64,000 nt of DNA from positions 4,712,001 through 4,776,000 of the forward strand of contig NC_043020.1 in NCBI RefSeq assembly GCF_006345805.1. Reading direction: 5' to 3'. Numbering within the stretch: position 1 is the first letter of the stretch; each line of letters begins with the position of its first letter. Made by a program: the position numbers and the translations under genes. The DNA comes from Octopus sinensis (taxonomy: Eukaryota). This document shows, one piece after another, positions 5,640 through 54,269 of the stretch. The notes under the pieces are model-generated. The model was not told the origin of the DNA and made no database searches. It saw only the letters and a list, made by a program, of their open reading frames with translations.

Positions 5640-7075
5640 CTGTTTTCAATATTGTTGTCAGTGGTGGTTCAATGCCACTTTATGATCCACTGGTATCAGA
5701 TGGTTCAGTAGTTGGAGATATTACCCAATGTCTATTGATTAATTACTCACTGGTGGTTGTAACGGATGATGATGGTTACATTGAAGTGAGAGAGAAGTTC
5801 TCGTAGATGGTAGCTCAGTGGTTGTATTAGGGAACATTTCGTGATAGTAGAAGGTTGTTCCTGTCTGAGTAGCTGTTAGCTCAGTGCGGTTAAGCGATTA
5901 GTTAGTGGGGGGAGACAACAGTAAAGTTAGGATGGGCTATAGTTCAGTGGTATCAGATTGGGTTCAGAGCGAGTGGATTTTGTTCCTCGGTGGCAGGTTT
6001 AATATTTGTTTTATATAAAAATATTGTCAACTTAAAAGAAAGAGATGATTGTTCAGTGGGGGTAGTTATGGGCCCAGGTTTAGTAATCTATTGTTCATGG
6101 GAGTAGGTGAACATTTGCAGATGAAGGCTGAGTATTGAGTGAAGGCAATGTGTGGCGAGGTGATAATTAATGGCTTAACAGAGTCAGGCTTTACGTCACT
6201 AAAGGAGAAGATATCATCCAATGGGGCCAATAAAGACCCAGTTGTTTTGGAATGTAGATATTCTTTTCTATTCTAGGCACAGGGACCCAAATTTGGGGGG
6301 AGGGGGCCAGTCGATTATATTGACCCCAGTACGCAACTGGTACTTAATTTATCGACACCGAAAGGATAAAAGTCAAAGTCTACCTCGGCGGAATTTGAAC
6401 TCGGAACGTAAATACAGACGAAATACCGCAAAGCATTTCGCCCGGCGTGCTAACGATTCTGTCAGTTCGCCGCTCTTTAGGTCGTAGATATTAACATAGA
6501 ATGAGTTGTAAGTAAAGAAGGGCAATAACTCAATGAGAACGTGGGCGCTTGTTCAGTGGAGGTAGATGGAGTCTCAAAGGGAAAATCGTAGATAATAGAG
6601 CAATATTGGGAGGGTATGAATCGGTAGATCATTGTAGAGTAGTGGTGTGAAACGGTTTAGTTACATTGGAGTGAATGAGTTTTCTACAGAAGCAAATGTG
6701 AGCCCAACTGTTCCGTGATGTAGGGAGTGGAAAAGGGGATCTGCGAAGTATATGTTAGATGCGAGTGCATTGGAGAAGACATGTACCTGGGGATGGGGGA
6801 TGGGGGAATGGTGGGTAGATCAGTAAAACAAGGTGAGGAGTGCAATATGGATCAGTTCGGAAGGATGGAACCTGAATGATGGTATAAGAGGGGACGATTG
6901 GGCAATGGTGGTAAATGATGGTGAATTCAGTTGGATGGTGGTCCAGTGGTTGTAGAGGATATTTCAATGGTGGTTGATGATTGTCCTGTGGGTGTAGAAT
7001 ACGGGTTTTATCTTCTGTGAAAAGAAGATGGTGATTCAAGCTGAATAAAGATGGTTGTTCTGTTGTTGTTGATTT
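5640..7075 (-). pseudogene. Decayed Ser/Thr/Pro-rich former coding sequence interrupted by a SINE
   Basis: Fragments in shifting frames: STTTEQPS, STPTGQSSTTIEISSTTTGPP, TKPGPITTPTEQSS, ISPTTEPSDTSGS*SGIEPPLTTILKT. Ends at a phase-1 donor ACAG|GTAATT at 5640. Confidence 0.55.
6263..6483 (-). mobile_element. tRNA-derived SINE with 9-bp target-site duplication
   Basis: Head GGCGAACTGACAGAATCGTTAGCACGCCGGGCGAAATGC...GAGTTCAAATTCCGCCGAGG on the minus strand. TSD GTAGATATT at 6254-6262 and 6484-6492. Confidence 0.9.
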
Positions 7076-7293
7076 TTAAAATAGATTTGTGGTCTTCGAT
7101 GATTGTCCCGTGGTGGTAGACAATAACTCAGTGACTGTCGAAAATATGTTAGTGAGTGTAGATGTCGCTGCAGTGGTTGTTGATGGTTGTTGCCCGGTTG
7201 GTGTAGGCTGTGGTTCTGCGGTGGATTGGGTAACTCCGACAGTTGTGTCTCCACTCTGTCTGTTCCATGCGCCGTACCATTGTCGTGGAGGGT
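7076..7293 (-). CDS. Candidate exon of the mucin-like gene (phase-1 acceptor, 72 codons, then TAA)
   Basis: Acceptor CTGCTCTTTTACAG. Open frame DPPRQWYGAWNRQSGDTTVGVTQSTAEPQPTPTGQQPSTTTAATSTLTNIFSTVTELLSTTTGQSSKTTNLF*. Phase matches the donor at 9805. Confidence 0.55.
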
Positions 7294-7599
7294 CTGTAAA
7301 AGAGCAGATTTGTGTTTCAGTCTACATTTCAAACAGACATCACACGTTTGCTTGATATTAAGAATGGTAGCAATGATGCATATAATATTTAACAATCTTG
7401 AGAAATTAAGCTTCTCAAAACCAGAAAGGAGAAAGCTAATTCGAAGATTACAGATCCAATCCATCACTGTAACTATAAATATCTATAAAAACCTTCCAGA
7501 AGTTTATCAGTTGAATGTATATGAGCATGTCTAGATATGTGGCTATATGCAGGAGAATAAATACAATAAACTTACAAATCTGCACATACACATAAACAA

Positions 7600-7770: not shown

Positions 7771-8215
7771 TCAAGTTTTGTTTATGGTCCATTCAAGTAG
7801 TGAGTTTTTGTTGGGTGAGTTGTATGCAATTATGGGTGGCTTATCTGGTATTCCTGGAAGGAATCTATCCAGACTCCGTTTAAAGTTGATGGGATCCTTT
7901 TCCTCTTTGATCTCTTTCGGGACAATGTTAAATAGGGCAGGGCCTGTTGAGGAAAAGAAATTATGTTGCAGTGTACATGTATGCTGTGATCTTGAATTGG
8001 GCAGGGGACGTATGGCCCGTGGTCCCAGTCTTGGATGAACCTTGAAGCTAATGTTCAGGTCGTTTGGGCAAAGTTGGCGGTATATTCTCCGCATCGTACA
8101 AATGATGTACCGCTCACGGCGACGCTGGAGAGAGTAGAGTTTCAAGGCTTTAAGGCGATCCCAATAATCGAGAGCAGCCATGCCTTCAATTCGTTTAGTG
8201 AGTGCCCTCTGGGGT
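7771..8215 (-). mobile_element. CR1/L2-group LINE ORF2 3-prime fragment
   Basis: LDYWDRLKALKLYSLQRRRERY...GPALFNIVPKEIK...FKRSLDRFLPGIPDKP, a typical CR1 ORF2 C-terminus. Confidence 0.85.
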
Positions 8216-8221
8216 GATTCA

Positions 8222-8981
8222 TACATATATATATAAAATATATATATAAAATGTATGCACATGTGGTCGGATTCAGCTGAAAATATGCACACCTATGTTA
8301 AAAGTGCTAGCGAGTTTGCATGGCAACTTTGAGTTTGCTCAATTGAAAGACATGGCCTCTAGGGCAAAATTCCTCATCTTTCAAAATGTGGCCCACGTAG
8401 ACCCGAATGAAATAGGGGTATAATATCGAAACAAGTAAACCAATGATAAACTATTTTAATCCCAAGCAAGACCGGGTATATCTGTCTAATTTATAAAATG
8501 AAGAAGGCGAACATTGATACAAATTGGATTTTTATATAACAAAGGGTCTAAATGGGGCTGGAAGGGGATTAAAATTTACAGGAGGGGGTAACTTGAGGTG
8601 AGAAATTGATTGGGAGACGCTTTGGGGCGCTACAGTGATTGCTTTGGTGTTAAAATGGGTATTTTATTGATTTATGAGGACACTTGGGGGTCTAGATTGA
8701 ACACCTTTTGCCCGATTTCAATCAAATTTTCAACATCGTAAAGTGGAAGCGGATTTGTTATTTAAGCGCGAAAAATCAATATTTTTTATAAATTGGAGAG
8801 AGAGAGATAGAGAACGATAGGGAGTAAGAGAAAGCGAGGGAGAGTCCGAGAGAAAGGAAGAGTAAGAGAGGAAAAGTGAGAGAGAAAGACGAGAGAAACA
8901 AAGAGGGAGAATGTGGCGATAAGAAACAGAAAGTAACAACCACACCCTCACCCGCGCATAGAGCGGGTCACGTTAAGCTAG
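8222..8981 (+). mobile_element. Two adjacent non-autonomous Helitron-like elements
   Basis: 3-prime hairpin plus CTRR ends: CCCAAGCAAGACCGGG...CTAA near 8489, and ACCCGC-GCATAGA-GCGGGT...CTAG|T at 8950-8982. Confidence 0.5.
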
Positions 8982-9804
8982 TCAATGTACATGTATATGA
9001 TGATTATCATTATATATGTCTATGTATATAATTATACGGTGGCAAGGATCCTCTAAATTCACGCCATGCAATACTGATGATTATGATGCACTACAGAAAA
9101 GGAGACGAGACCATTACACAGGACGCTCCTCTGACGTCCAATAAGAACTTACCTCCAGTTCTCGCCTCTATTAACGTTTAGTGCAGAAGCGATCAACTAC
9201 AACAAATGTAATACCTTTCCAAAGACATTTAAAGCACCGACTGCTGCCAGAATGGAGCAGATCAACAAAAGATCAACAGTTGATCAGAAAAATATCGCCA
9301 AAGGTAAAAGCAAACATTCAAACACACCGACAGAGCAATACTTAGGAAGAAATGCACGGAGTTACCTGTTCAGTCCCCTTCGGCAGGCAAAGCTTCGTAC
9401 TTCTATTATTGCAGTGAACTGAATAAGCGATTCAGTAATGATTCTTACTTGGATATTATGGAGACTACTACATGTATTCATGTAGCTATTAGTGTCTATG
9501 TATGAAGAGACCAGTGTTTACCTGTATCTAATTGTAAGACTGTGTTTTTGGAAATGGGTTTCATTCAGCATCATTATTCATGTCAGAACCTCAATATTTA
9601 CGATAATAGTTACGTTGAAAAACAATTCCATTCTGTATTTCCAGCCAAGGCGATTTCACGTCGACAAAATCGTCGATATTTCACTTTCGTTGAGATTACA
9701 TCAAGCAAGACACACCAATCGATGTCAGGATGTGAGAGATGTCACAATCTGATCGTTGCAAAAAGAATTTGGAGAGAAGATGTTGCAGAGACTAAAACAC
9801 TCAC

Positions 9805-12800
9805 CTGTTGTCGTTGGTTCTTCAGTTGTGACTGTTGTCGTCGGTGCTGCTGCTGCTGCTTGGTTGTTCCGTTGTTGTTGTTGTTGTTGTCGGTGGTTGC
9901 TCAGTTATTGCTTTTGTTGGTCTCACATTTGCTGTCCTTCATTGACCAATTGTTGTTGTTGGTTGATCAGCTGTTGTTATTCATACGTCTTTTGTTGTTC
10001 AGACGTAGTTTGTTCACTCAGATAATGTTATTGTTTGATCATTTGTTTTCTTCGTTGTTCAGTTTTTATCCTTGGTTGAAAAGTTGTTGGATGTTCCATT
10101 GTTCAATTCTTGTTGTGGGTTGTTCAGTTGTTGTTGTTGTTGGTTGTTCACTTGTTGTTGTTGTTGGTTGTTCAGTTGTTGTTGTTGTTGTATTGTTCAG
10201 TTGTTGTTGTTGTTGTATTGTTCAGTTGTTGTTGTTGTTGTATTGTTCAGTTGTTGTTGTTGTTCTATTGTTCAGTTGTTGTTGTTGTTGGATGTTCAGT
10301 TGTTGTTGTTGTTGTATTGTTCAGTTGTTGTTGTTGTTGTATTGTTCAGTTGTTGTTGTTGTTGGTTGTTCAGTTGTTGTTGTTGTTGTATTGTTCAGTT
10401 GTTGTTGTTGTTGTATTGTTCAGTTGTTGTTGTTGTTGTATTGTTCAGTTGTTGTTGTTGTTGGTTGTTCAGTTGTTGTTGTTGTTGGATGTTCAGTTGT
10501 TGTTGTTGTTGGTTGTTCAGTTGTTGTTGTTGTTGGTTGTTCAGTTGTTGTTGTTGTTGGTTGTTCAGTTGTTGTTGTTGTTGGTTGTTCAGTTGTTGTT
10601 GTTGTTGGTTGTTCAGTTGTTGTTATTGTTGGTTGTTCAGTTGTTGTTATTGTTGGTTGTTCCGCTGTTGTTGTTGTTGGATGTTCAGTTGTTGTTGTTG
10701 TTGGTTGTTCAGTTGTTGTTGTTGTTGGTTGTTCAGTTGTTGTTGTTGTTGGTTGTTCAGTTGTTGTTGTTGTTGGTTGTTCAGTTGTTGTTATTGTTGG
10801 TTGTTCAGTTGTTGTTGTTGGTGGTTGTTCAGTTGTTGTTGTTGTTGGTTGTTCAGTTGTTGTTGTTGTTGGTTGTTCCGTTGTTGTTGTTGTTGGTTGT
10901 TCAGTTGTTGTTGTTGTTGGTTGTTCAGTTGTTGTTATTGTTGGTTGTTCCGTTGTTGTTGTTGTTGGATGTTCAGTTGTTGTTGTTGTTGGTTGTTCAG
11001 TTGTTGTTGTTGTTGGTTGTTCAGTTGTTGTTGTTGTTGGTTGTTCAGTTGTTGTTATTGTTGGTTGTTCAGTTGTTGTTGTTGGATGTTCAGTTGTTGT
11101 TGTTGTTGGTTGTTCAGTTGTTGTTATTGTTGGTTGTTCCGTTGTTGTTGTTGTTGGATGTTCAGTTGTTGTTGCTGTTGGTTGTTCAGTTGTTGTTGTT
11201 GTTGGTTGTTCAGTTGTTGTTGTTGTAGGTTGTTCTGTTGTTGTTGTTGTTGTTGTTCAGTTGTTTTTTTGTTGTATGTTCACTTGTTGTTGTTGTTGTG
11301 GTTGTTGTTGTTGTTGTTGTTTTTTGTTGATGTTCAGTTGTTGTTGTTGTGGTTGTTCAGTTGTTGTTGTTGTTGTTTTGTTTGTTGTTGTTGTTGGTTG
11401 TTCAGTTGTTGTTGTTGTTGGATGTTCAGTTGTTGTTGTTGTTGGTTGTTCAGTTGTTGTTGTTGTTGGTTGTCAGTTCTTGTTGTTGTTGGTTGTTCAG
11501 TTGTTGTTATTGTTGGTTGTTCCGTTGTTGTTGTTGTTGGATGTTCAGTTTTTGTTGTTGTTGGTTGTTCAGTTGTTGTTGTTGTTGGTTGTTCAGTTGT
11601 TGTTGTTGTTGGTTGTTCAGTTGTTGTTGTTGTTGGTTGTTCAGTTGTTGTTATTGTTGGTTGTTCAGTTGTTGTTGTTGGTGGTTGTTCAGTTGTTGTT
11701 GTTGTTGGTTGTTCAGTTGTTGTTGTTGTTGGTTGTTCCGTTGTTGTTGTTGTTGGTTGTTCAGTTGTTGTTGTTGTTGGTTGTTCAGTTGTTGTTATTG
11801 TTGGTTGTTCCGTTGTTGTTGTTGTTGGATGTTCAGTTGTTGTTGTTGTTGGTTGTTCAGTTGTTGTTGTTGTTGGTTGTTCAGTTGTTGTTGTTGTTGG
11901 TTGTTCAGTTGTTGTTGTTGTTGGTTGTTCCGTTGTTGTTGTTGTTGGATGTTCAGTTGTTGTTGTTGTTGGTTGTTCAGTTGTTGTTGTTGTTGGTTGT
12001 TCCGTTGTTGTTGTTGTTGGATGTTCAGTTGTTGTTGTTGTTGGTTGTTCAGTTGTTGTTGTTGTTGGTTGTTCAGTTGTTGTTGTTGTTGGTTGTACAG
12101 TTGTTGTTATTGTTGGTTGTTCCTTTTTGTTGTTGGATGTTCAGTTGTTGTTGTTGTTGGTTGTTCAGTTGTTGTTGTTGTTTGTTGTCAGTTGTTGTTG
12201 TTGTTGGTTGTTCAGTTGTTTTATTGTTGGTTGTTCCGTTGTTGTTGTTGTTGGATGTTCAGTGTTGTTTTGCTGTTGTTTGTTCCGTTGTTGTTGTTGT
12301 TGGATGTTCAGTTGTTGTTGCTGTTGGTTGTTCAGTTGTTGTTGTTGTTGGTTGTTCAGTTGTTGTTGTTGTTGGTTGTTCAGTTGGTGTTGTTGTTGGT
12401 TGTTCAGTTGTTGTTGTTGTTGGTTGTTCAGTTGTTGTTGTTGTTGGTTGTTCAGTTGTTGTTGTTGTTGGATGTTCAGTTCTTTTTGTTGTTTGTTGTT
12501 CAGTGGTTGTTGTTGTTGGATGTTCAGTTGTTGTTGTTGGTTGTTCTGTTGTTGTTGTTGTTGTTGTTGTTGGATGTTCAGTTGTTGTTATTGTTGGTTG
12601 TTCCGTTGTTGTTGTTGTTGGATGTTCAGTTGTTGTTGCTGTTGGTTGTTCAGTTGTTGTTGTTGTTGGTTGTTTAGTTGTTGTTGTTGTTGGTTGTTCA
12701 GTTGTTGTTATTGTTGGTTGTTCCGTTGTTGTTGTTGTTGGATGTTCAGTTGTTGTTGCTGTTGGTTGTTCCGTTGTTGTTGTTGTTGGATGTTCAGTTG

Positions 12801-15800
12801 TTGTTGCTGTTGGTTGTTCAGTTGTTGTTGTTGTTGGTTGTTCAGTTGTTGTTGTTGTTGGTTGTTCAGTTGGTGTTGTTGTTGGTTGTTCAGTTGTTGT
12901 TGTTGTTGGTTGTTCAGTTGTTGTTGTTGTTGGTTGTTCAGTTGTTTGTTGTGTTGATGTGTTCAGTTCTTTTTGTTGTTGTTGTTCAGTGGTTGTTGTT
13001 GTTGGATGTTCAGTTGTTGTTGTTGGTTTTCTGTTGTTGGTTTTGTTGTTGTTGTTGGATGTTCAGTTGTTGTTGTGTTGTTGTTTCCGTTGTTGGTTTG
13101 TGTTGGATGTTCAGTTATGGTTGCTGTTGGTTGTTCAGTTGTTGTTGTTGTTGGTTGTTCAGTTGTTGTTGTAGGTTGTTCTGTGTTGTTGTTGTTGTTG
13201 TTCAGTTGTTTTTGTTGTATGTTCACTTGTTGTTGTTGTTGGTTGTTCTGTTGTTGTTGTTGTTGTTGTTGGATGTTCAGTTGTTGTTGTTGTTGGATGT
13301 TGAGTTGTTGTTGTTGTTGGTTGTTCAGTTGTTGTTGTTGGATGTTCAGTTGTTATTGTTGTTGGATGTTCAGTTGTTGTTGTTGGTTGTTCAGTTGTTG
13401 TTGTTGTTGGTTGTTCAGTTGTTGTTGCTTTTGGTTGTTCAGTTGTTGTTGTTGTTGTTGGTGTTGTTGGATGTTCAGTTGTTGTTGCTGTTGGTTGTTC
13501 AGTTGTTGTTGTTGTTGGTTGTTCAGTTGTTGTTGTTGTTGGTTGTTCTGTTGTTGTTGTTGTTGTTGGATGTTCAGTTGTTGTTGTTGTTGGTTGTTCT
13601 GTTGTTGTTGTTGTTGGATGTTCAGTTGTTGTTGTTGTTGGTTTTCAGTTGTTGTTGTTGTTGGTTGTTCAGTTGTTGTTGTTGTTGGATGTTCATTGTT
13701 GTTGTTGTTGGTTGTTCAGTTGTTGTTGTTGTTGGTTGTTCAGTTTGTTGTTGTTGTGGTTGTTCAGTTGTTGTTGTTGTTGGTGTTCTGTTGTTGTGTG
13801 GTTGTTGGATGTTCAGTTGTTTTTGTTGTTGGTTGTTCAGTTGTTGTTGTGTTGGTTGGTTTTCAGTTGTTGTGTTGTGGGTTGTTCAGTTTGTTGTTTT
13901 GTTGGTTGTTCTGTTGTTGATGTTGTTGTTGGTTGTTCAGTTGTTTTTGTTGTTGGTTGTTCAGTTGTTGTTGTTGTTGTTTGTTCAGTTGTCGTTGTTG
14001 TTGGTTGTTCTGTTGTTGTTGTTGTTGGTTGTTCAGTTGTTGTTGTTGTTGGATGTTCTGTTGTTGGATCTTCAGTTGTTGATGTTGTTTGTTCAGTTGT
14101 TGTTGTTGTTGGATGTTCAGTTGTTGTTGTTGGATGTTCAGTTGTTGTTGTTGCTGGATGTCCTGTTGTAGTTGTTGTTGGTTGTTCTGTTGTTGTTGTT
14201 GTTGTATTGTTCAGTTGTTGTTGTTGTTGGTTGTTCAGTTGTTGTTGTTCTTGTATTGTTCAGTTGTTGTTGTTGTTGTATTGTTCAGTTGTTGTTGTTG
14301 TTGTATTGTTCAGTTGTTGTTGTTGTTGGTTGTTAAGTTGTTGTTGTTGTTGGATGTCCAGTTGTTGTTGTTGTTGGTTGTTCAGTTGTTGTTGTTGTTG
14401 GTTGTTCAGTTGTTGTTGTTGTTGGTTGTTCAGTTGTTGTTATTGTTGGTTGTTCCCTTGTTGTTGTTGTTGGATGTTCAGTTGTTGTTGTTGTTGGTTG
14501 TTCAGTTGTTGTTGCTGTTGGTTGTTCAGTTGATGTTGTTGTTGGTTGTTCAGTTGTTGTTGTTGTTGGTTGTTCAGTTGTTGTTGTTGTTGGTTGTTCA
14601 GTTGTTGTTGTTGGTGGTTGTTCACTTGTTGTTGTTGTTGGTTGTTCAGTTGTTGTTGTTGTTGGTTGTTCCGTTGTTGTTGTTGTTGGTTGTTCAGTCG
14701 TTGTTGTTGTTGTTGTTCAGTTGTTGTTGTTGTTGGTTGTTCAGTTGTTGTTATTTTTGTTGTTCCGTTGTTGTTGTTGTTGATGTTCAGTTGTTGTTGT
14801 TGTTGGTTGTTCAGTTGTTGTTGTTTTGTTGGTTGTTCAGTTTGTTGTTGTTGTTGTTGTTCAGTTTGTTGTTATTGTTGGTTGTTCCGTTGTTGTTGTT
14901 GTTGGATGTTCAGTTGTTGTGCTGTTGGTTGTTCCGTTGTTGTTGTTGTTGGATGTTCAGTTGTTGTTGCTGTTGTTGGTTAGTTGTTGTTGTTGTTGGT
15001 GTTCAGTTTTGTTGGTTGGTTGTTCAGTGTTGTTGTTGGTGTTGGTTGTTCATTGTTGTTGTTGTTGGTTGTTCAGTTGTTGTTGTTGTTGGTTGTTCAG
15101 TTGTTGTTGTTGTTGGTTGTTCTCTTTTTGTTGTTTGTTGTTCAGTGGTTGTTGTTGTTGGATGTTCAGTTGTTGTTGTTGGTTGTTCTGTTGTTGTTGT
15201 TGTTGTTGTTGTTGGATGTTCAGTTGTTGTTATTGTTGGTTGTTCCGTTGTTGTTGTTGTTGGATGTTCAGTTGTTGTTGCTGTTGGTTGTTCAGTTGTT
15301 GTTGTTGTTGGTTGTTCAGTTTTTTTTGTTGTATGTTCACTTGTTGTTGTTGTTGGTTGTTCTGTTGTTGTTGTTGTTGTTGGATGTTCAGTTGTTGTTG
15401 TTGTTGGATGTTGAGTTGTTGTTGTTATTGGTTGTTCAGTTGTTGTTGTTGGATGTTCAGTTGTTATTGTTGTTGGATGTTCAGTTGTTGTTGTTGGTTG
15501 TTCAGTTGTTGTTGTTATTGCTTGTTCAGTTGTTGCTTTTGGTTGTTCAGTTGTTGTTGTTGTTGTTGTTGTTGTTGGATGTTCAGTTGTTGTTGCTGTT
15601 GGTTGTTCAGTTGTTGTTGTTGTTGGTTGTTCAGTTGTTGTTGTTGTTGGTTGTTCTGTTGTTGTTGTTGTTGTTGGATGTTCAGTTGTTGTTGTTGTTG
15701 GTTGTTCTGTTGTTGTTGTTGTTGGTTGTTCAGTTGTTGTTGTTGTGGGTTGTTCAGTTGTTGTTGTTGTTGGTTGTTCTGTTGTTGTTGTTGTTGTTGG

Positions 15801-18800
15801 ATGTTCAGTTGTTTTTGTTTTTGGTTGTTCAGTTGTTGTTGTTGTTGGTTGTTCAGTGTTGTTGTTGTGGTTGTTCATTGTTGTGGTTGTTTGTTGTTGT
15901 TCTGTTGTTGTTGTTGTTGTTGGTTGTTCAGTTGTTTTTGTTGTTGGTTGTTCAGTTGTTGTTGTTGTTGGTTGTTCAGTTGTCGTTGTTGTTGGTTGTT
16001 CTGTTGTTGTTGTTGTTTGTTGTTCAGTTGTTGTTGTTGTTGGATGTTCTGTTGTCGGATCTTCAGTGGTTGATGTTGTTTGTTCAGTTGTTGTTGTTGT
16101 TGGATGTTCAGTTGTTGTTGTTGTTGTTGTTGTTGTTCGATGTTCAGTTGTTGTTGTTGCTGGATGTCCTGTTGTAGTTGTTGTTGGTTGTTCTGTTGTT
16201 GTTGTTGTTGATGTTCAGTTGTTGTTGTTGTTGCTTGTTCTGTTGTTGTTGTTGTTGTTGTTGGATGTTCAGTTGTTGTTGTTGTTGGATGTTCAGTTGT
16301 TGTTGTTGTTGGTTGTTCAGTTGTTGTTGTTGTTGGTTGTTCTGTTGTTGTTGTTGTTGTATGTTCACTTGTTGTTGTTGTTGGTTGTTCTGTTGTTGTT
16401 GTTGTTGGATGTTCACTTGTTCTTGTTGTTGGTTGTTCAGTTGTTGTTGTTGTTGGTTGTTCAGTTGTTGTTGTTGTTGGTTGTCCTGTTGTTGTTGTTG
16501 TTGGATGTTCACTTGTTGTTGTTGTTGGTTGTTCAGTTGTTGTTGTTGTTGGTTGTTCAGTTGTTGTTGTTGTTGGATGTTCACTTGTTGTTGTTGTTGG
16601 TTGTTCTGTTGTTGTTGTTGGATGTTCAGTTGTTGTTGTTGTTGGATGTTCAGTTGTTGTTGTTGTTGGTTGTTCAGTTGTTGTTGTTGTTGGATGTTCA
16701 CTTGTTGTTGTTGTTGGTTGTTCTGTTGTTGTTGTTGTTGTTGTTGGATGTTCGGTTGTTGTTGTTGTTGGATGTTCAGTTGTTGTTGTTGTTGGTTGTT
16801 CAGTTGTTGTTGTTGTTGGATGTTCACTTGTTGTTGTTGTTGGTTGTTCTGTTGTTGTTGGATGTTCAGTTGTTGTTGTTGTTGGATGTTCAGTTGTTGT
16901 TGTTGTTGGTTGTTCAGTTGTTGTTGTTGTTGGATGTTCACTTGTTGTTGTTGTTGGTTGTTCTGTTGTTGTTGTTGTTGTTGTTGGATGTTCGGTTGTT
17001 GTTGTTGTTGGATGTTCTGTTGTTGTTGTTGTTTGTTGTTCAGTTGTTGTTGGATGTTCAGTTGTTATTGTTGTTGGATGTTCAGTTGTTGTTGTTGGTT
17101 GTTCAGTTGTTGTTGTTGTTGGTTGTTCATTTGTTGTTGCTTTTGGTTGTTCAGTTGTTGTTGATGTTGTTGTTGTTGGATGTTCAGTTGTTGTTGCTGT
17201 TGGTTGTTCAGTTGTTGTTGTTGTTGGTTGTTCAGTTGTTGTTGTTGTTGGTTGTTCAGTTGTTGTTGTTGTTGGATGTTCAGTTGTTGTTGTTGTGGGT
17301 TGTTCAGTTGTTGTTGTTGTTGGTTGTTCTGTTGTTGTTGTTGTTGTTGGATGTTCAGTTGTTGTTGTTGTTGGTTGTTCAGTTGTTGTTGTTGCTGGTT
17401 GTTCAGTTGTTGTTGTTGTTGGATGTTCAGTTGTTGTTGTTGTGGGTTGTTCAGTTGTTGTTGTTGTTGGTTGTTCTGTTGTTGTTGTTGTTGTTGGATG
17501 TTCAGTTGTTTTTGTTGTGTGTTGTTCAGTTGTTGTTGTTATTGGTTGTTCTGCTGTTGTTGTTGTTGGTTGTTCTGTTGTTGTTGTTGTTGGTTGTTCG
17601 GTTGTTGTTGTTGTTGGATGTCCTGTTGTTGGATCTTCAGTTGTTGATGTTGTTTGTTCAGTTGTTGTTGTTGTTGGATGTTCAGTTGTTGTTGTTGTTG
17701 GATGTTCAGTTGTTGTTGTTGTTGGATGTTCAGTTGTTGTTGTTGCTGGATGTCCTGTTGTAGTTGTTGTTGGTTGTTCTGTTGTTGTTGTTGTTGGATG
17801 TTCAGTTGTTGTTGTTGTTGGTTGTTCTGTTGTTGTTGTTGTTGGTTGTGCAGTTGTTGTTGTTGGTTGTTCAGTTGTTGCTGTTGTTGGTTGTTCTGTT
17901 GTTGTTGTTGTTGGTTGTTCAGTTGTTGTTGTTGTTGGATGTTCAGTTGTTGTTGTTGTTGGATGTTCAGTTGTTGTTGTTGTTGGATGTTCATTTGTTG
18001 TTGTTGTTGGTTGTTCAGTTGTTGTTGTTACTGGATGTTCAGTTGTTGTTGTTGTTGTATGTTCAGTTGTTGTTGTTGTTGGATGTTCAGTTGTTGTTGT
18101 TGTTGGTTGTTCAGTTATTGTTGTTGTTGGATGTTCTGTTGTTGTTGTTGTTGTATGTTTAGTTGTTGTTGTTGTTGGATGTTCAGTTGTTGTTGTTGTT
18201 GGTTGTTCAGTTGTTTTTGTTGTTGTTGGATGTTCTGTTGTTGTTGTTGTTGGATGTTCAGTTGTTGTTGTTGTTGGATGTTCAGTTGTTGTTGTTGTTG
18301 TTTGTTCAGTTGTTGTTGTTGTTCGTTCTTCAGTTGTTGTTGTTGTTGGATGTTCACTTGTTGTTGTTTTTGGATGTTCAGTTGTTGTTGTTGTTGGATG
18401 TTCAGTTGTTGTTGTTGTTGGATGTTCAGTTGTTGTTGTTGTTGGTTTTTCAGTTGTTGTTGTTGGACGTTCAGTTGTTGTTGTTGTTGGATGTTCACTT
18501 GTTGTTGTTGGTTCTTCAGTTGTTGTTGTTGTTGGGTGTTCAGTTGTTGTTGTTGTTGGTTGTTCTGTTGTTGTTGTTGTTCTTGTTGGATGTTCATTTG
18601 TTGTTGTAGTTTGATGTTCAGTTGTTGTTGATGTGTGTTGTTCAGTTGTTGTTGTTGTTGGTTGTTCAGTTGTTGTTGTTGGATGTTCAGTTGTTGTTGT
18701 TGTTGGTTGTTCTGTTGTTGTTGTTGTTGGTTGTTCAGTTGTTGTTGTTGTTGGATGTTCACTTGTTGTTATTGTTGGTTGTTCTGTTGTTGTTGTTGTT

Positions 18801-21628
18801 CTTGTTGGATGTTCAGTTGTTGTTGTTGTTGGATGTTCAGTTGTTGTTGGTGTAGGTTGTTCTGTTGTTGTTGTTGTTGTTGTTGGACGTTCAGTTGTTG
18901 TTGTTGGTTGTTGTTCTGTTGTGGTTGTTGTTGTTGTTGGATGTTCAGTTGTTGTTGTTGTTGGTTGTTCATTTGTTGTTGTTGTTGGATGTTCAGTTGT
19001 TGTTGTGTTGGTTGTTCAGTTGTTGTTGTTGTTGGTTGTTCAGTTGTTGTTGTTGTTGGTTGTTCAGTTGTTGTTGTTGTTGGTTGTTCTGTTGTTGTTG
19101 TTGTTGTTGGAAGTTCAGTTGTTATTGTTGTTGGATGTTCAGTTGTTGTTGTTGTGTGTTGTTCAGTTGTTGTTGTTGGTTGTTCAGTTGTTGTTGTTGT
19201 TGGTTGTTCAGTTGTTGTTGTTGTTGGTTGTTCTGTTGTTGTTGTTGTTGGTTGTTCAGTTGTTATTGTTGTTGGATGTTCTCTTCTTGTTGTTGTTGTT
19301 GGATGTTCAGTTGTTGTTGTTGTTGGTTGTTCAGTTGTTGTTGTTGTTGGATGTTCAGTTGTTGTTGTTGTTGTTGATGTTGTTGAATGTTCAGTTGTTG
19401 TTGTTGTTGGATGTTCAGTTGTCGTTGTTGCTGGATGTTCTGTTGTTGTTGTTGTTGGTTGTTCAGTTGTTGTTTTTGATGGATGTTCAGTTGTTGTTGT
19501 TGTTGGTTGTTCTGTTGTTGTTGTTGTTGGTTGTTCAGTTGTTGTTGTTGGTTGTTCTGTTGTTGTTGTTGTTGGTTGTTCTGTTCTTGTTGTTGTTGGT
19601 TGTTCAGTTGTTGTTGTTGTTGGATGTTCACTTGTTGTTGTTGTTGGATGTTCAGTTGTTGTTGTTGTTGGATGTTCATTTGTTGTTGTTGTTGGTTGTT
19701 CAGTTGTTGATGTTACTGGATGTTCAGTTGTTGTTGTTGTTGTATGTTCAGTTGTTGTTGTTGTTGGATGTTCAGTTGTTGTTGTTGTTGGTTGTTCAGT
19801 TATTGTTGTTGTTGGATGTTCTGTTGTTGTTGTTGTTGGATGTTCAGTTGTTGTTGTTGTTGGATGTTCAGTTGTTGTTGTTGTTGGTTGTTCAGTTGTT
19901 GTTGTTGTTGGATGTTCAGTTGTTGTTGTTGTTGGTTGTTCAGTTGTTGTTGTTGTTGGATGTTCTGTTGTTGTTGTTGTTGGATGTTCAGTTGTTGTTG
20001 TTGTTGGATGTTCAGTTGTTGTTGTTGTTGGTTGTTCAGTTGTTGTTGTTGGACGTTCAGTTGTTGTTGTTGTCGGATGTTCAGTTGTTGTTGTTGGTTG
20101 TTCAGTTGTTGTTGTTGTTGGTTGTTCAGTTGTTGTTGTTGTTGGTTGTTCTGTTGTTGTTGTTGTTGTTGGATGTTCAGTTGTTGTTGTTGTTGGATGT
20201 TCAGTTGTTGTTGTTGTGTGTTGTTCAGTTGTTGTTGTTGGTTGTTCAGTTGTTGTTGTTGTTGGTTGTTCAGTTGTTGTTGTTGTTGGTTGTTCTGTTG
20301 TTGTTGTTGTTGCTTGTTCATTTGTTGTTGTTGTTGGATGTTCTGTTCTTGTTGTTGTTGTTGGATGTTCAGTTGTTGTTGTTGTTGGTTGTTCAGTTGT
20401 TGTTGTTGTTGTTGATGTTGTTGAATGTTCAGTTGTTGTTGTTGTTGGATGTTCAGTTGTTGTGTGTTGTTCAGTTGTTGTGTTGTGTTGTTGTGTTGGT
20501 TGTTCAGTTGTTGTTGTTGTTGGAAGTTCAGTTGTTGTTGTTGTTGGTTGTTCTGTTGTTGTTGTTGTTGGTTGTTCAGTTGTTGTTTTTGGATGTTCAG
20601 TTGTTGTTGTTGTTGGTTTTTCTGTTGTTGTTGTTGTTGGTTGTTCAGTTGTTGTTGTTGTTGGATGTTCATTTGTTGTTGTTGGTTGTTCAGTTGTTGT
20701 TGTTACTGGATGTTCAGTTGTTGTTGTTGTTGTATGTTCAGTTGTTGTTGTTGTTGGATGTTCAGTTGTTGTTGTTGTTGGTTGTTCAGTTATTGTTGTT
20801 GTTGGATGTTCTGTTGTTGTTGTTGTGGTATGTTCAGTTGTTGTTGTTGTTGGATGTTCAGTTGTTGTTGTTGTTGGTTGTTCAGTTGTTGTTGTTGTTG
20901 TTGGATGTTCTGTTGTTGTTGTTGTTGGATGTTCAGTTGTTGTTGTTGTTGGATGTTCAGTTGTTGTTGTTGTTGGTTGTTCAGTTGTTGTTGTTGTTCG
21001 TTGTTCAGTTGTTGTTGTTGTTGGATGTTCAGTTGTTGTTGTTGTTGGATGTTCAGTTGTTGTTGTTGTTGGATGCTCAGTTGTTGTTGTTGTTGGATGT
21101 TCAGTTGTTGTTGTTGTTGGTTGTTCAGTTGTTGTTGTTGGACGTTCAGGTGTTGTTGTTGTTGGATGTTCATTTGTTGTTGTTGGTTCTTCTGTTGTTG
21201 TTGTTGTTGGTTGTTCAGTTGTTGTTGTTGTTGTTGGTTGTTCAGTTGTTGTTGTTGTTGGTTGTTCTGTTTTGTTGTTGTTGTTGGATGTTCAGTTGTT
21301 GTTGGATGTTCAGTTGTTGTTGTAGTTGGATGTTCAGTTGTTATTGTTGTGTGTTGTTCAGTTGTTGTTGTTGTTGGTTGTTCAGTTGTTGTTGTTGGAT
21401 GTTCAGTTGTTGTTGTTGTTGGTTGTTCTGTTGTTGTTGTTGTTGGTTGTTCAGTTGTTGTTGTTGATGGATGTTCTCTTGTTGTTATTGTTGGTTGTTC
21501 TGTTGTTGTTGTTGTTGTTGTTGGATGTTCAGTTGTGTTGTTGTGGATGTTCAGTTGTTGTTGTTGTTGGTTGTTGTTGTTGTTGTGTTGTTGTTGTGGA
21601 TGTTCAGTTGTTGTTGTGGTTGGTTGTT
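9805..21628 (-). CDS. Giant mucin-like Thr-rich tandem-repeat exon, (TTTTTEQP/TTTTTEHP)n, with local frame changes; 5-prime end lost in the gap
   Basis: The plus-strand 24-mer GGTTGTTCAGTTGTTGTTGTTGTT reads ACA ACA ACA ACA ACT GAA CAA CCA on the minus strand. Variants are mostly synonymous (ACT/ACA/ACG before GAA) or conservative (CAA/CAT), and most length changes are in triplets. It ends ...TTVTTEEPTTT G|GTGAG, a phase-1 donor at 9805/9804. Track ORF 15024-15878 shows this frame. Confidence 0.75.
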
Positions 21629-21728
21629 NNNNNNNNNNNNNNNNNNNNNNNNNNNNNNNNNNNNNNNNNNNNNNNNNNNNNNNNNNNNNNNNNNNNNNNN
21701 NNNNNNNNNNNNNNNNNNNNNNNNNNNN
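21629..21728. other. Assembly gap (100 N)
   Basis: Run of N directly at the end of the repeat array. Confidence 1.
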
Positions 21729-31290: not shown

Positions 31291-32580
31291 TCTTTCTATG
31301 CGCAGATGCGCAGACACGCGCTGAGACTGCGACATCTCTGGCTCTATGTAGACGACGGTGAACAGGTGTGGTCGCCGTTTGTGAGGCACGCTTTCCCGCA
31401 GCTCGTCTCCATGACCGAACTGCAGTCGTGGATCAAAAAGAGGCCGAGGAAGGGCGAATGGCACCGCGAGTGTCGCGTTGCTCTCAAGCAACTCTGCCGT
31501 CCTGGGTCGACCTTAAGTGACTTCAACACAACCAAAGCATTCTATAGGGGTTTAGTGGAGGGGAGGTACGACGACGAGCTCGGGGCGAACCTGGACGTCG
31601 ACGAGGAGTACCTGACCCGCCTGTTCGGGACGACTTTCGGGCCAGGGCCCATGGACAACTTCCAGAGATCCCTGGCCTGGCAGTGCTACCGAGAAGCGCT
31701 ACCCGTTCGGGATAAGCTCTACAGACACGGCTCGAGAAACACGGGGCCGACCTGCCCGAGATGCGGTCAGAGCGACGAAACCGTTCTGCACGCATTCGTT
31801 CAGTGTCCAACAATTTCCGACCTGTGGGCTTGTGTCGAACAACTGCTGTCACGTGTGGGACGAGTCGGTTTATCAGCTGAGTCTATCGTCAATATGTCAC
31901 GCCTCCTTCCTTCAAACGGGAAGGAAGAGCTATTTCATCATCCTTGTGGCTATGGCGAAAGAATGTATCTGGTGGACGCGTCTGAAAGGATTGGAGACAA
32001 ACACTTTCCTCTCTGGTCAATCTCTCATCAACTTCTTCAAGTACCACTTGAAAAGGAAAGTGAGAGTAGAGAGGCAAGTTTTGTCTAGCGAATGTTTTAA
32101 AAAAAGATGGTGAATGTAGCAAGAATGGCACGTATGAATGACGAAGCCACCTTGAGCATAGTCCTATGAACCCAGAATCGAAAACAGAGAGTTGCTTATT
32201 TGCAAAAAAAAAAAAAAAAAAAAAAGAAATATAAAATGTGACTTCATTGACCGAGGTTACCGTGGTCTTTTCCGCAGGCTTTTCTTTCCACGGGTAAACC
32301 TCACCTGTCCTCCCCTTTTACACTCATATTGACATTCCTGTGATAACGATCCCTATTGATCATTTTTTTTCCTCTCCCCCCCTTTTCTTTTTTTTTTTTT
32401 TTTTTTTTTAACCCCCCTTATTTTTGTCCTCTTTCTCTCCTTTTACGATCCCTTTTGATCGAACCTCCCCCTTCCTTTTTTTTTTTTTTTTTTTTTTTTA
32501 ATACCTTCAAAAGAAAAGCTCTACCTTGTAATTTGTTCTATCTGTGTGCAGCCCTGTGTGGCTAATAAGAAACATATCTA
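31290..32580 (+). mobile_element. 5-prime-truncated Tx1/L1-clade LINE (ORF2 C-terminus and 3-prime UTR) within (TCTA)n
   Basis: GC-rich ORF with the zinc-knuckle CPRCGQSDETVLHAFVQC. A frameshift near 31890 continues as IILVAMAKECIWWTR... T-rich 3-prime UTR. (TCTA)n on both sides. Confidence 0.85.
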
Positions 32581-38007: not shown

Positions 38008-38538
38008 TACGTACGTACGTATGTATGTATATGTATACATATGCCTGTATATGTATGTATAAATGTGTGTGTGATACTTTATGTTGCTATATTATATTAT
38101 ATTATATTATGCAATGAATGAAAGTTATAATTAATAATTAAATTCCATTGATCAAAAACTGCATAAAAATATTATAGGTGACAACTTACGATACTTGAAG
38201 TTACATTTTTCACACTCAAGAATTGTCTTCTCCCGAATGCTTAAATATAATTCTTCGATATAAAGTAATTTATCTTTTGTTAATCATTACAATTAATTTT
38301 ACACACATGAGTGTTTCGTTCAACATTCTTAAACAATCCTTACTCAGGGAGCTTTTGAGAGGGATGGGCTACTCGACCAGAAGAAAATTCTAACTGGGCC
38401 CCACCTGTAAGGTCATGTGCAGTTTATCTTGATATGAGATCCCCATGCCCCAATCCTTCTGCAAGTGTTTTACATTCACTGTTGATATAATAATCCATAC
38501 TGATCAGATCTCTGCCACCATTCTTTTTTATTAATGTA

Positions 38539-38936
38539 CTAGCAGTATCGCCCGGCGTTGCTCGGGCTTGTAAGGGAAATAACTATATAAGCATTTTTAG
38601 AGAGTTATAGTCAAAAAATAGCAAAAAAATGCATTAAAAATGGAAAAAAAATGATGGTAAATTTTTTTAAAAATCGTTGACTCATCGTAGACATTTTTAG
38701 AGAGTTACTTCCCTGATATAATAGCGAAAAAAATGCATTAAAATGGAAAAAATGATGGGAAATTTTTTTTTAAATCGTAGACTCATCGTAGATTCGCGCT
38801 AATACCCAGAAGGGCTCGATATGAATCACGACTATAAGATACCCGGTTTTGATTAAACTGCACCGCAAAATGTGGGAGTAGTTAGGAATCTAAATCGTAG
38901 GAGACAGACACACAACCTCTCTTTTATATATAAAGA
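38539..38936 (-). mobile_element. Non-autonomous Helitron
   Basis: On the minus strand: A|TC start, CCCGAGCAACGCCGGG hairpin, CTAG|T end. Confidence 0.85.
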
Positions 38937-38989
38937 TAACCTGTTTTAGAGTGTAAAGCTTCGTACCATGTCATTAAATTTCTCATCTT

Positions 38990-42223: not shown

Positions 42224-43025
42224 CGTGGTCTGATCAATAAGTATCCGGACTGTCGCCATTGTAACGAAGCTAAAGAGGCCGCTTGGCACAGATTGACCCT
42301 GAACTCTGCTGTGCATGCGCGCTAAGTTTTAACGTTCTAGTTCACTTCCACTGTCTACAGCAGTGCTTGGAAGGTAGGTTTGTAGCGTATGGTCGTTGCA
42401 TTAACCATGAGAGAGAAAGCTGAACAGGGAATCTCCATAAAATTTTGCCAAAAGCTTGGCAATACCTGCTTAGAGGCCTAAACAAAGTTTTCAAAAAGTT
42501 TTCATCTTTCTCAACACAATCAAGGAGATCTTGTGCAACTGAAACCCGAGTGTGTTTTTGCTCAGCTGAAAGCAGTTTTAGCACAAACTTGGCAAACAAG
42601 TGTCTCGTTCCCAAATCTTCAGTTATAATGGCCTGAACTGAACCGTAATTAATTTACACATCCTCTCATAACTCACGGATGGTGGTTCGACGATTTCCCT
42701 TCACAGCTACAAGCACATTTGCAATGTTTTTGACAGTTCTGCTGGTTGCGGGTCTCCCAGAACGTTCGTCAATATCGACATTTTTCGGCCACCTTGGAAA
42801 CGTCTGAACCACTCGTACACTTGTGTGCGGCTCATACACTCCTCTCCATACACTTTCTGCAACTTTGTGTAGGCCTCTGAGCAGGTATCACAATGGCAAC
42901 TTTCTCTGTCATGGTCAAGGCGACGATTACACGCCCATTCCAAGTATTGCTGTGTACAACGGAAGTAAGCTAGAACGTAAAAACTTAATGCGCATGCACT
43001 GCAGATTCCAATCTGTGCCAATCGG
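42224..43025. mobile_element. Two mariner 5-prime halves in inverted orientation
   Basis: TA|CGTGGTCTGATCAATAAGTATCCGGACTG TIR, then plus-strand EQGISIKFCQKLGNTC. The minus-strand copy gives EAYTKLQKVYGEECMSRTQVYEWFRRF and AKFVLKLLSAEQKHTRVSVAQDLLD. Confidence 0.85.
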
Positions 43026-44087
43026 AAAATAGATCTTCCGCTGCTTTTATTTGGCAAATTTGGGGAAGTGTAATTCCCAGTCAATGTTAGAGGAGAGCTG
43101 GAAGGTTTACTATTTGGTATTAGTGTTCTTAGATCGAGTGTTATGCTTGTAAGATCTAGGTGGGCGAGATTGTCTAACCGTAGTAATCTATACCCTTATC
43201 ATTTGCCATATTTGTCTCCGATGACGGAATATCCCATACTCTGGGCTATCCCAGAAAAAGCTGCAAGACGTTGAATTCTGTCTTCGAAACTCATTATGCA
43301 ATTATTAATTGTCTGATAAATAAAGGGGGATATCGAACGTTCGTAGGCTTTACGTTATGTAAATAAATCGATTTTTGCTGTATTCAAATTCTCTATTTTA
43401 ATTAATATTACACTACTCAATTTATATTCACATATATCGAATCAGATAGAAACATCTATATATAGAATCAGATAGAACACCATAATATGGATAGTACTGG
43501 TGTCTATTAAACACTAATATTAACGCAAGAAGACCAATTCCTGTAAATTCACAGATATATGGATAAACTGCAGGAAGCTAAGCTAGGATGTAAGACATCC
43601 CTGGAAAGAGCAATCTTTATCTTTACAAAACCTCATATATATATATACTTCTAATATAGGATAAAATTCACCCCCCCCCCAAAAAAAAATGCCATCAAAG
43701 TGGCAGCATATTAAAATGCCTTTCAAGGCGAAAATTATACACAATTTATAATCAAGGGCAAAAGAAAAAAAAAATCTATGCCAATATGCTGAGGATAGAC
43801 TTTAAATCGTCAATCATGAATCTTGCTTCTGCTTTTTTCCATGGGTGCTTGTAAGTATTTCATTTATTTCTTATCGTGTTCTCTACTGAGGAGAGGAAAA
43901 TCCGTGGGATTAATCCTGAAATTGGTTCAATATAGAGATAATGAATTTATTTTTAAATTCTGTTAGCTTGCCTTCCTCGATTTCAGCACGACGTGTATTT
44001 ATAGTGAATGCATATTGTAATGTGGTGATTGACGATTTAAAGTCTAGTCTCAGCAAATTGGCAATGAAATGTTTTTCTTTTGCCCTC

Positions 44088-47920: not shown

Positions 47921-47952
<32 letters not shown>

Positions 47953-48832: not shown

Positions 48833-48989
48833 TTATTTCCTCCACTGCCCCGGAGTGGCATTACAACCTCAAAGTACCGCAATGACGGTAAATGCTTGCG
48901 GTTCCTTCATATATCGACCTCAAACGTTGAGACAAACCCAGTCAGTTAATTCGGCTCTTTTCCCGCGTCGTATCCACCTTTTTCTTTAC

Positions 48990-54214: not shown

Positions 54215-54269
<55 letters not shown>

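What the first reader, a model, noticed from the sequence alone, without database searches (positions are those of the whole stretch)
9805..21628. Giant hidden mucin-like exon: at least 11.8 kb of (TTTTTEQP/TTTTTEHP)n that the ORF track largely misses
Seen: a 24-bp unit repeated for 11,824 bp (about 3,900 codons if continuous) and still open at the gap. Most variation behaves like coding sequence in one minus-strand frame (ACT/ACA/ACG Thr wobble, Gln/His swap, triplet-length Thr tracts), and the array ends at a clean phase-1 GT donor. That frame has almost no start codons, so an ORF finder reports its V/C/L-rich antisense shadows instead. Established: long PTS tandem-repeat exons flanked by phase-1 introns are typical of secreted or membrane mucins. 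Inference: a very large O-glycosylated octopus protein with a regular Thr5-Glu-(Gln/His)-Pro spacing, in which the Glu-His pairs might bind metal or respond to pH. I cannot assign a family because no globular domain is visible in the window.
Basis: partly seen in the sequence, partly recalled or inferred. Interest (0 to 1): 0.82.

Follow-up and report, generated by a model that had tools for sequence, protein, structure and literature searches.

The report
Octopus 24-bp repeat, half mucin-like
An 11.5-kb run of a 24-base repeat in an octopus genome reads like a mucin in one frame, but only the half next to an assembly gap keeps that frame, so it is at best a partly decayed or truncated mucin-type exon and possibly plain non-coding repeat DNA.

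Summary
The repeat is real. About 480 head-to-tail 24-nt units span 10110-21595, with degenerate copies down to 9810, and the array abuts a 100-N gap. The minus-strand consensus GAACAACCAACAACAACAACAACT reads EQPTTTTT, with a common EHPTTTTT variant.

The claim of one continuous exon of at least 11.8 kb fails.
- The unit is (AAC)5-TG-(AAC)2-C, so 5 of 6 frames are open and a poly-Thr frame is automatic.
- The Thr frame changes phase 46 times.
- A recurrent 25-nt unit (EQYNNNNN*) occurs in two clusters.
- The 300 nt before the GT donor carry stops in all three minus frames.
- Synonymous changes show no excess.
- No protein among 5.8 billion clusters carries the repeat, its antisense frames or the proposed downstream exon.

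Some evidence still points to coding.
- The frame breaks are strongly clustered. The gap-side 6.5 kb has 3 uncompensated shifts and 51 in-frame length variants, with open runs of 758 and 934 codons. The donor-side 5 kb has 39 shifts.
- CAG|GTGAGT occurs once in the window, exactly at the last repeat copy.
- A real Octopus sinensis protein carries (TTSTTEAP)n in an exon with a phase-1 donor.

Best reading, at about 0.5: a mucin-type repeat exon that is decayed or truncated. Main rival, at about 0.35: a non-coding AAC-derived minisatellite.

The parts
10110..21595 (-). Core tandem array of about 480 units of 24 nt. Minus consensus GAACAACCAACAACAACAACAACT (EQPTTTTT, with EHPTTTTT variant).
   Evidence: TRF result; unit census; 20-mer scan.
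15075..21628 (-). Gap-side domain in which the Thr frame is nearly coherent. Runs are 11, 90, 106, 9, 1 and 30 units, with 3 uncompensated frameshifts and one compensated pair. It holds 51 in-frame length variants, and 42% of its 24-nt units are EHP.
   Evidence: permutation test (P = 5e-5 for the longest run).
18994..21267 (-). 758-codon stop-free stretch in the Thr frame.
16193..18994 (-). 934-codon stop-free stretch in the Thr frame. A single 23-nt unit separates it from the previous run.
10110..15074 (-). Donor-side domain with 39 frame-changing intervals and only 15 in-frame length variants. Clean runs of identical EQP units alternate with messy patches.
14187..14311 (-). First cluster of the 25-nt unit GAACAATACAACAACAACAACAACT (4 copies, two of them one base off). 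It reads EQYNNNNN then TGA in the Thr frame.
10173..10446 (-). Second cluster of the same 25-nt frame-breaking unit (9 copies, one of them one base off).
9806..10109 (-). Degenerate repeat edge with copies at 9810, 9955 and 10083. All three minus frames carry stops, including a TGA in the Thr-like frame reached by substitution.
9800..9808 (-). Donor-like 9-mer CAG|GTGAGT, the only occurrence on either strand of the window. It follows ...PTTTVTTEEPTTT in phase 1.
21629..21728 (.). 100-N assembly gap. The array runs into it, so its true length and 5' end are unknown.
7079..7293 (-). It is open in phase 1 but otherwise unsupported.
   Evidence: no homologue; no Pfam family; acceptor not among the 32 AG sites with at least 70% pyrimidine tracts.

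Best explanation
The array is a mucin-type (PTS) tandem-repeat coding exon by origin, on the minus strand. Its repeat is Thr5-Glu-(Gln/His)-Pro, built on an interrupted AAC microsatellite. It is not intact in this assembly.

Only the gap-side 6.5 kb or more still behaves like a reading frame. It has abundant whole-codon length changes and substitutions but almost no frameshifts. The donor-side 5 kb and the 300-nt link to the old GT donor have lost the frame.

The locus is therefore either a decaying pseudo-exon or a gene whose ORF now ends inside the array, with the first stop near 15027. In the second case the rest of the array would be untranslated.

**Shown:** the array, its unit, the distribution of frame breaks, the donor motif, and the absence of any matching protein.

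**Inferred:** that frame coherence reflects present or recent selection for translation, and that a product would be a secreted, O-glycosylated, extended polymer.
For: - **Clustering of frame breaks.** There are 46 breaks in 437 unit intervals, yet unbroken runs of 105 and 89 intervals. Permutation gives P = 5e-5 for the longest run, and 0 of 200,000 shuffles reach the sum of the two longest.
- **Clustering is not explained by age.** Substitution density is even along the array, about 45 per kb. Rare substitutions number 42 gap-side and 25 donor-side. Non-recurrent frameshifts number 7 gap-side and 26 donor-side (Fisher P = 1e-4). In-frame length variants number 51 and 15 (P = 1e-7).
- **Comparison of duplicated blocks.** Within the gap-side half, gaps are 40 of 3n length against 19 others. 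Within the donor-side half they are 7 against 45.
- **Stops by frame.** The Thr frame has no stops in any long run. The other consensus-open minus frame has 34.
- **Donor.** CAGGTGAGT occurs once in both strands of the window. It directly follows the last degenerate repeat, on the right strand and in phase 1.
- **Octopus relative.** The best hit among 5.8 billion protein clusters is an Octopus sinensis REJ-domain protein (E = 2e-50; next best 6e-28). Its (TTSTTEAP)n array is also a 24-nt repeat. It lies in one exon after a hydrophobic, signal-peptide-like segment (my reading), has no frameshift in 58 units, and ends at a phase-1 donor.
- **Errors do not explain the pattern.** The cleanest stretches of the donor-side half are the most uniform ones: 26 and 34 units with no shift. 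That argues against unpolished long-read errors.
Against: - The unit is 21/24 nt AAC repeat, so 5 of 6 frames are open, a poly-Thr frame is guaranteed, and slippage alone produces 3n indels.
- There is no synonymous excess. Third positions of the ACA codons vary least. Thr to Lys/Arg/Ile changes (position 2) outnumber Thr to Pro/Ala/Ser changes (position 1) in both halves.
- No protein or gene model carries the repeat, its antisense frames or the proposed next exon. Pfam finds nothing.
- BLASTP with composition correction finds no significant match to the Octopus protein, so that similarity is low-complexity only.
- A 4.1-kb clearly non-coding 29-nt minisatellite lies in an intron of that Octopus gene. 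Multi-kb arrays are therefore ordinary in this genome.
- Uneven assembly or polishing quality could mimic the two-domain pattern.
- I did not show that the window comes from the same assembly as the control locus.
Confidence: 0.5

Rival explanations
1. The array is a non-coding minisatellite that grew from an (AAC)n microsatellite and was never translated. The mucin-like frame is a by-product of composition. The 3n length changes come from triplet slippage. The donor motif is chance.
For: - 21 of the 24 nt are AAC repeats, and 5 of 6 frames are open in the consensus.
- AAC/GTT microsatellites occur elsewhere in the window, at 25316, 44605, 47632 and 56047.
- There is no synonymous excess.
- There are 46 phase changes, and a frame-breaking 25-nt unit has spread to two clusters.
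- All minus frames are closed next to the donor.
- No protein matches in any frame.
- A 4.1-kb intronic minisatellite sits in the comparison locus.
Against: - It does not explain why frameshifts are about five-fold depleted in the gap-side 6.5 kb at equal substitution density.
- It does not explain why the only perfect donor 9-mer in 128 kb of sequence (both strands) sits exactly at the array edge, on the Thr-frame strand.
- It does not explain why the best database match is a same-genus PTS exon with the same 8-residue layout.
Confidence: 0.35
2. The reader is right in full. This is one intact exon of at least 11.8 kb spliced at 9805, and every frame break is a long-read assembly error.
For: - Most frame-breaking units are singletons caused by 1-nt indels in AA or CC dinucleotides.
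- A non-coding control array in the O. sinensis assembly also has about 15% of its units with 1-nt deletions.
- The window and that assembly share the 100-N gap convention.
Against: - The 25-nt GAACAATAC unit is one identical variant present in two clusters, so it is not random error. It puts TGA in the Thr frame.
- The non-repetitive 300 nt before the donor need about eight corrections, including a TGA created by substitution.
- Frame breaks avoid the most uniform runs, where polishing should be worst.
- Breaks are rarer near the contig end, which I would expect to be the worse-covered side.
Confidence: 0.07

Closest known systems
Octopus sinensis 'serine-rich adhesin for platelets-like' REJ-domain protein (P0001; GCA_006345805.1, CM016865.1)
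   Same: - Both have a 24-nt, 8-residue repeat of five hydroxy-amino acids followed by Glu-x-Pro: TTSTTEAP against TTTTTEQP. Six of 8 consensus residues and 18 of 24 consensus nt agree (my comparison of the consensus units).
- Both have the repeat in a single exon ending in a phase-1 donor.
   Different: - P0001 has 58 units with mixed Thr/Ser codons (ACC, ACT, AGT, ACA) and no frameshift.
- Its array is preceded by a hydrophobic, signal-peptide-like segment (my reading) and followed by REJ-domain exons.
- The window array has about 480 units that are almost pure AAC, 46 phase changes, no flanking domains in the window and no gene model.
- Composition-corrected BLASTP shows no significant similarity.
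Central VNTR exons of gel-forming and membrane mucins, such as the 8-residue TTSTTSAP repeat of human MUC5AC (recalled from memory, not tested here)
   Same: A very long single-exon array of short Thr/Pro-rich units. Unit number and length vary by whole codons, and residue-level constraint is weak.
   Different: Those exons are continuous ORFs flanked by VWD, CysD or SEA domains, with transcript and protein evidence. None of that is shown here, and half of this array is out of frame.
Non-coding minisatellites of octopus genomes, such as the 29-nt, 4.1-kb array at L001:100905-105001
   Same: A multi-kb head-to-tail array of a short unit in repeat-rich, intron-like sequence. It has higher-order duplicated blocks and scattered 1-nt deletions.
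   Different: - The window's unit is a multiple of 3.
- It has a stop-free Thr-rich frame.
- It has a 6.5-kb domain depleted of frameshifts.
- It has a perfect donor at its edge.

Membership tests
Mucin / PTS tandem-repeat protein | Tandem repeats rich in Pro, Thr and Ser in the translated frame | tested here: met
   The consensus EQPTTTTT is 62.5% Thr and 12.5% Pro. This is expected for any AAC-based repeat, so it carries little weight.
Mucin / PTS tandem-repeat protein | Uninterrupted reading frame through the repeat exon to a splice site or stop | tested here: not met
   46 phase changes. The longest Thr-frame runs are 758 and 934 codons. All three minus frames carry stops in 9830-10110.
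Mucin / PTS tandem-repeat protein | Indels restricted to whole codons | tested here: inconclusive
   Gap-side half: 51 in-frame variants against 7 frame-changing intervals. Donor-side half: 15 against 39. Triplet slippage and uneven assembly quality are confounders.
Mucin / PTS tandem-repeat protein | Excess of synonymous or PTS-compatible substitutions | tested here: not met
   Synonymous changes are 18% and 7.6% of changes in the two halves, against about 26% of possible changes. Thr-codon position 3 varies least.
Mucin / PTS tandem-repeat protein | Signal peptide or flanking globular domains (VWD, SEA, REJ and the like) | not testable with these tools
   The 5' side lies in the gap. No exon related to P0001 is in the window, and Pfam finds only transposon fragments. 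Introns of about 25 kb in P0001 mean that further exons could lie outside the window.
Mucin / PTS tandem-repeat protein | Transcript, gene model or homologous protein | tested here: not met
   No protein with this repeat, with its antisense frames, or with the candidate next exon was found among 5.8 billion clusters. RNA data are not available to these tools.
Mucin / PTS tandem-repeat protein | Dense O-glycosylation of the product | not testable with these tools
   This needs glycoproteomics.
Non-coding microsatellite-derived minisatellite | Head-to-tail array of a 10-100 nt unit made mostly of a simple motif | tested here: met
   Unit = (AAC)5 TG (AAC)2 C, in 478.6 copies.
Non-coding microsatellite-derived minisatellite | Frame-breaking variants tolerated and spread by duplication | tested here: inconclusive
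   Met in 10110-15074, where the 25-nt unit forms two clusters and there are 39 shifts. Not met in 15075-21628.
Paralogue of the Octopus REJ-domain PTS protein (P0001) | REJ-domain exons downstream of the repeat exon | tested here: not met
   tblastn of P0001 against the window gives only chance-level hits, best E = 0.088. Only 9.8 kb lie downstream, so this is a weak test.

The most novel reading that the evidence does not exclude
The gap-side part of the array, at least 6.5 kb and continuing into the gap, is the live central exon of an unannotated giant octopus mucin. Its repeat would be a strictly periodic Thr5-Glu-(Gln/His)-Pro. The three frameshifts there would be assembly errors. The regular Glu/His spacing would give the glycopolymer pH- or metal-dependent behaviour.
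Probability: 0.2. Interest if true: 0.5.

Novelty: new member of a known kind. Interest (0 to 1): 0.27.

Why it matters
If the gap-side half is translated, this would be an unannotated octopus mucin-like protein of more than 2,000 residues. It would also be one more case of annotation pipelines missing giant repeat exons. That is useful for work on cephalopod mucus and adhesion, but not surprising.

If the array is a non-coding minisatellite, it is ordinary. The practical lesson is methodological. Any AAC-based repeat yields a mucin-looking frame and whole-codon indels for free. Frame-break distribution and substitution pattern have to be checked before such arrays are called hidden exons.

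Tried and rejected
- **Protein searches, all negative for this locus.**
  - The 1046-aa Thr-frame stretch returned only generic PTS proteins and one Octopus protein with a different repeat.
  - The candidate 7293 exon joined to the last repeat codons returned no hit.
  - A 950-aa plus-strand ORF covering the V, L and C frames returned no hit.
- **Exact look-up of a window ORF** (31306-32088), to identify the assembly, found nothing on record.
- **Pfam** on the Thr frame and the flanking ORFs found only zf-RVT and a Mos1 HTH domain.
- **tblastn of the Octopus REJ protein** against the window found no paralogous exons.
- **BLASTP of the Thr frame against that protein** found nothing once composition is corrected.
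- **Literature searches** for octopus mucin tandem repeats, octopus minisatellites and the O. sinensis assembly turned up nothing on this array.
- **Linear-gap wrap-around alignment** overcounted indels (265 non-3n events), because 3-nt shifts in AAC runs are split. I replaced it with a phase analysis anchored on GAAC.
- **Whole-half alignment** of the donor-side half against the gap-side half was uninformative, at about 87.5% identity in any register.
- **Rejected idea: the other open minus frame (QQQQLNNQ) is the coding one.** It carries 34 stops.
- **Rejected idea: the two-domain pattern reflects age.** Substitution density and identity between duplicated blocks are alike in both halves.
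Full report
**1. What is there**

TRF reports a single array at 10110-21595 with period 24, 478.6 copies, 85% matches and 7% indels. A 20-mer taken from the unit matches 424 times with up to 3 mismatches, against 0.06 expected. Every listed match is on the minus strand, and the lowest are degenerate copies at 10083, 9955 and 9810.

The array runs straight into a 100-N gap at 21629-21728. Its real length and its 5' end on the minus strand are unknown. The region has extreme strand asymmetry, with GC skew about +0.72 and AT skew about -0.83.

The commonest minus-strand unit is GAACAACCAACAACAACAACAACT = EQPTTTTT, with 110 exact copies. It is followed by GAACATCC... = EHPTTTTT.

**2. Why the mucin look is cheap**

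The unit can be written G(AAC)2C(AAC)5T, so 21 of its 24 nt are an AAC microsatellite interrupted by TG and C. Three things follow from this.
- The consensus is open in five of six frames. Only the minus frame that reads TGA is closed.
- One frame is necessarily poly-Thr.
- Triplet slippage will produce whole-codon length changes without any selection.

**3. Frame integrity**

I aligned the array to the cyclic consensus and followed the phase of the GAAC anchor in 438 units. The Thr frame changes phase 46 times. The longest stop-free minus-strand stretch is 3141 nt.

A 25-nt unit, GAACAATACAACAACAACAACAACT, has 10 exact copies. With near-identical variants it accounts for 13 frame-changing intervals in two clusters, at 14311-14187 and 10446-10173. 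In the Thr frame it reads EQYNNNNN followed by TGA. Because it is one recurrent variant, it cannot be random sequencing error.

Between the array and the supposed donor (9830-10110), all three minus frames contain several stops. One of them is a TGA in the Thr-like frame that arose by substitution. In this assembly the array is therefore not joined by an open frame to position 9806, and the figure of about 3,900 codons if continuous does not hold.

**4. Substitution pattern**

I tabulated changes from the consensus in the 348 units of exactly 24 nt.
- Gln to His (CAA to CAT) occurs in 116 units.
- Inside the four ACA codons, the third position varies least: 16 changes, against 46 at position 1 and 64 at position 2.
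- Leaving out the two hot positions, synonymous changes are 18% of changes in the gap-side half and 7.6% in the donor-side half. About 26% of the possible single-base changes are synonymous (my tally of the table).
- Thr to Lys/Arg/Ile changes outnumber Thr to Pro/Ala/Ser changes in both halves.

There is no residue-level signature of coding. PTS domains are only weakly constrained, so this is mild evidence against a coding role, not decisive evidence.

**5. The unexpected part: two domains**

The frame breaks are far from evenly spread.
- From 21530 to 15074 the phase runs are 11, 90, 106, 9, 1 and 30 units. That amounts to three uncompensated shifts plus one compensated pair (26 + 22 nt) in 6.5 kb.
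- From 15074 to 10110 there are 39 shifts.
- Shuffling the 46 breaks over the 437 intervals gives a longest run as long as observed in 5e-5 of trials. The observed sum of the two longest runs was never reached in 200,000 trials.

Age does not explain this.
- Substitutions against the consensus run at about 45 per kb along the whole array.
- Rare substitutions number 42 gap-side and 25 donor-side.
- Non-recurrent frameshifts number 7 gap-side and 26 donor-side (Fisher P = 1e-4).
- In-frame length variants number 51 and 15 (P = 1e-7).

Both halves consist of duplicated blocks with similar best-match identity, 90-98%. Between such blocks, gaps in the gap-side half are 40 of 3n length against 19 others. 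In the donor-side half they are 7 against 45.

Within the phase runs, the Thr frame has no stop in any long run. That gives open stretches of 758 and 934 codons. The other consensus-open minus frame has 34 stops.

**6. Selection or assembly artefact?**

Most frame-breaking units are singletons caused by 1-nt indels, the typical long-read error. A clearly non-coding 29-nt, 4.1-kb array in an Octopus sinensis intron shows 1-nt deletions in about 15% of its units. Two observations argue against a pure error explanation.
- The most uniform stretches of the donor-side half, runs of 26 and 34 in-phase units made largely of identical EQP units, carry no shift at all. The shifts cluster in messy patches that also carry several substitutions per unit.
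- The part nearest the contig end, where I would expect consensus quality to be worst, is the cleaner one.

I cannot exclude uneven polishing. I also did not establish that the window comes from the same assembly as the control. What is shown is 85-93% identity of interspersed repeats to O. sinensis chromosome CM016865.1 and the same 100-N gap convention. An octopus origin is therefore supported at about genus level only.

**7. Splice sites and neighbours**

CAGGTGAGT occurs once on both strands of the window, at 9808-9800 on the minus strand. It comes immediately after the last degenerate repeat copy. The preceding 31 codons, ending ...AAAAAPTTTVTTEEPTTT, are open and end in phase 1. By my rough estimate, such a 9-mer falling within about 300 nt of the array edge on the correct strand has a chance of a few per thousand. 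This is the best single argument that an exon once ended here.

- It is absent from my list of 32 AG sites downstream with at least 70% pyrimidine tracts. Five of those give at least 50 open codons in phase 1.
- Its 72-codon product has no homologue and no Pfam family.
- The minus strand there is A/C-rich, so Thr-, Pro- and Gln-rich peptides appear in all frames.

The supposed intron contains an ORF (7771-8292) that I read, from memory, as the C-terminal end of a retrotransposon reverse transcriptase. Pfam does not confirm this. Introns of about 25 kb in the comparison gene mean that real downstream exons could lie outside the window.

**8. External evidence**

No protein among 5.8 billion clusters carries the TTTTTE(Q/H)P repeat, and none is flagged as encoded by the window. 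The antisense frames also find nothing.

The best hit for the Thr frame is an Octopus sinensis REJ-domain protein (E = 2e-50; the next hit, from a fungus, has E = 6e-28). Its first coding exon holds a hydrophobic, signal-peptide-like segment (my reading) and 58 units of a 24-nt repeat encoding TTSTTEAP. The codons are mixed (ACC, ACT, AGT, ACA), there is no frameshift, and the exon ends in a phase-1 donor, CAG|GTAAAT. Octopus does build real PTS exons on this 8-residue plan.

Composition-corrected BLASTP finds no significant similarity between the two. The relationship may therefore be shared motif and shared mutational habit, not common descent.

**9. Verdict**

| Reading | Probability |
|---|---|
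| PTS-type repeat exon by origin, with only the gap-side 6.5 kb or more still frame-coherent. It is either a decaying pseudo-exon or an ORF that now ends inside the array, first stop near 15027. | about 0.5 |
| AAC-derived minisatellite that was never translated | about 0.35 |

If translated, the product would be an extended, densely O-glycosylated, acidic polymer. The Glu/His metal- or pH-sensing idea is untested speculation. Either way this belongs to a known kind of feature and is of modest interest. The question is settled by stranded long-read RNA data and an accurate re-assembly across the gap.

Noticed in passing
window 15075-21628 versus 10110-15074: The same array falls into two domains with opposite indel spectra, although substitution density and identity between duplicated blocks are equal. 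The gap-side domain has mostly 3n indels and 42% EHP units. The donor-side domain has mostly 1-nt indels and 20% EHP units. Whether the cause is selection, the mutational process or assembly quality is unresolved.
   Followed up: partly
L001:100905-105001 (O. sinensis CM016865.1, intron of the REJ-domain gene): A 29-nt minisatellite of 142 copies (4.1 kb). About 15% of its units carry 1-nt deletions and none carry insertions. It is a useful yardstick for indel noise in long arrays of that assembly.
   Followed up: partly
window 31306-32088 (+): A 260-aa ORF with a zf-RVT domain (PF13966, E = 7.7e-9), which is a retrotransposon fragment. No identical gene is on record.
   Followed up: yes
window 42707-43084 (-): An ORF with the HTH_48 domain of Mos1 transposase (PF17906, E = 2.5e-8), which is a mariner-type transposon fragment.
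   Followed up: yes
window 7771-8292 (-): A 173-aa ORF that looks, from memory, like the C-terminal region of a LINE reverse transcriptase.
   Followed up: partly
window 6248-6479; also 38526-38937, 48597-49403, 54107-54501, 59863-60262: Interspersed SINE-like repeats. The first has 42 copies in a 118-kb O. sinensis locus. The others are 85-93% identical to copies there. This is the basis for assigning the window to Octopus.
   Followed up: partly
window 5700-7320 (-): An A/C-rich stretch with scattered ACTGA(A/G)C motifs that read T-E-Q or T-E-L in changing frames. At least one, near 5815, looks like a reverse-complemented tRNA A-box (my recollection of the motif), that is, a SINE head. Others could be very old repeat remnants.
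   Followed up: no
window 52243-52497: A 129-bp unit duplicated in tandem at 95% identity. It contains a GGAACTGAACC motif that reminded me of SINE sequence; I did not check this.
   Followed up: no
whole window: Very high microsatellite density, with 118 TRF rows in 64 kb. Long trinucleotide arrays include (TTA)128 at 33240, (AGT)111 at 47922, (AGA)123 at 29905 and (CTT)101 at 50187. No conventional gene was seen anywhere in the window.
   Followed up: no
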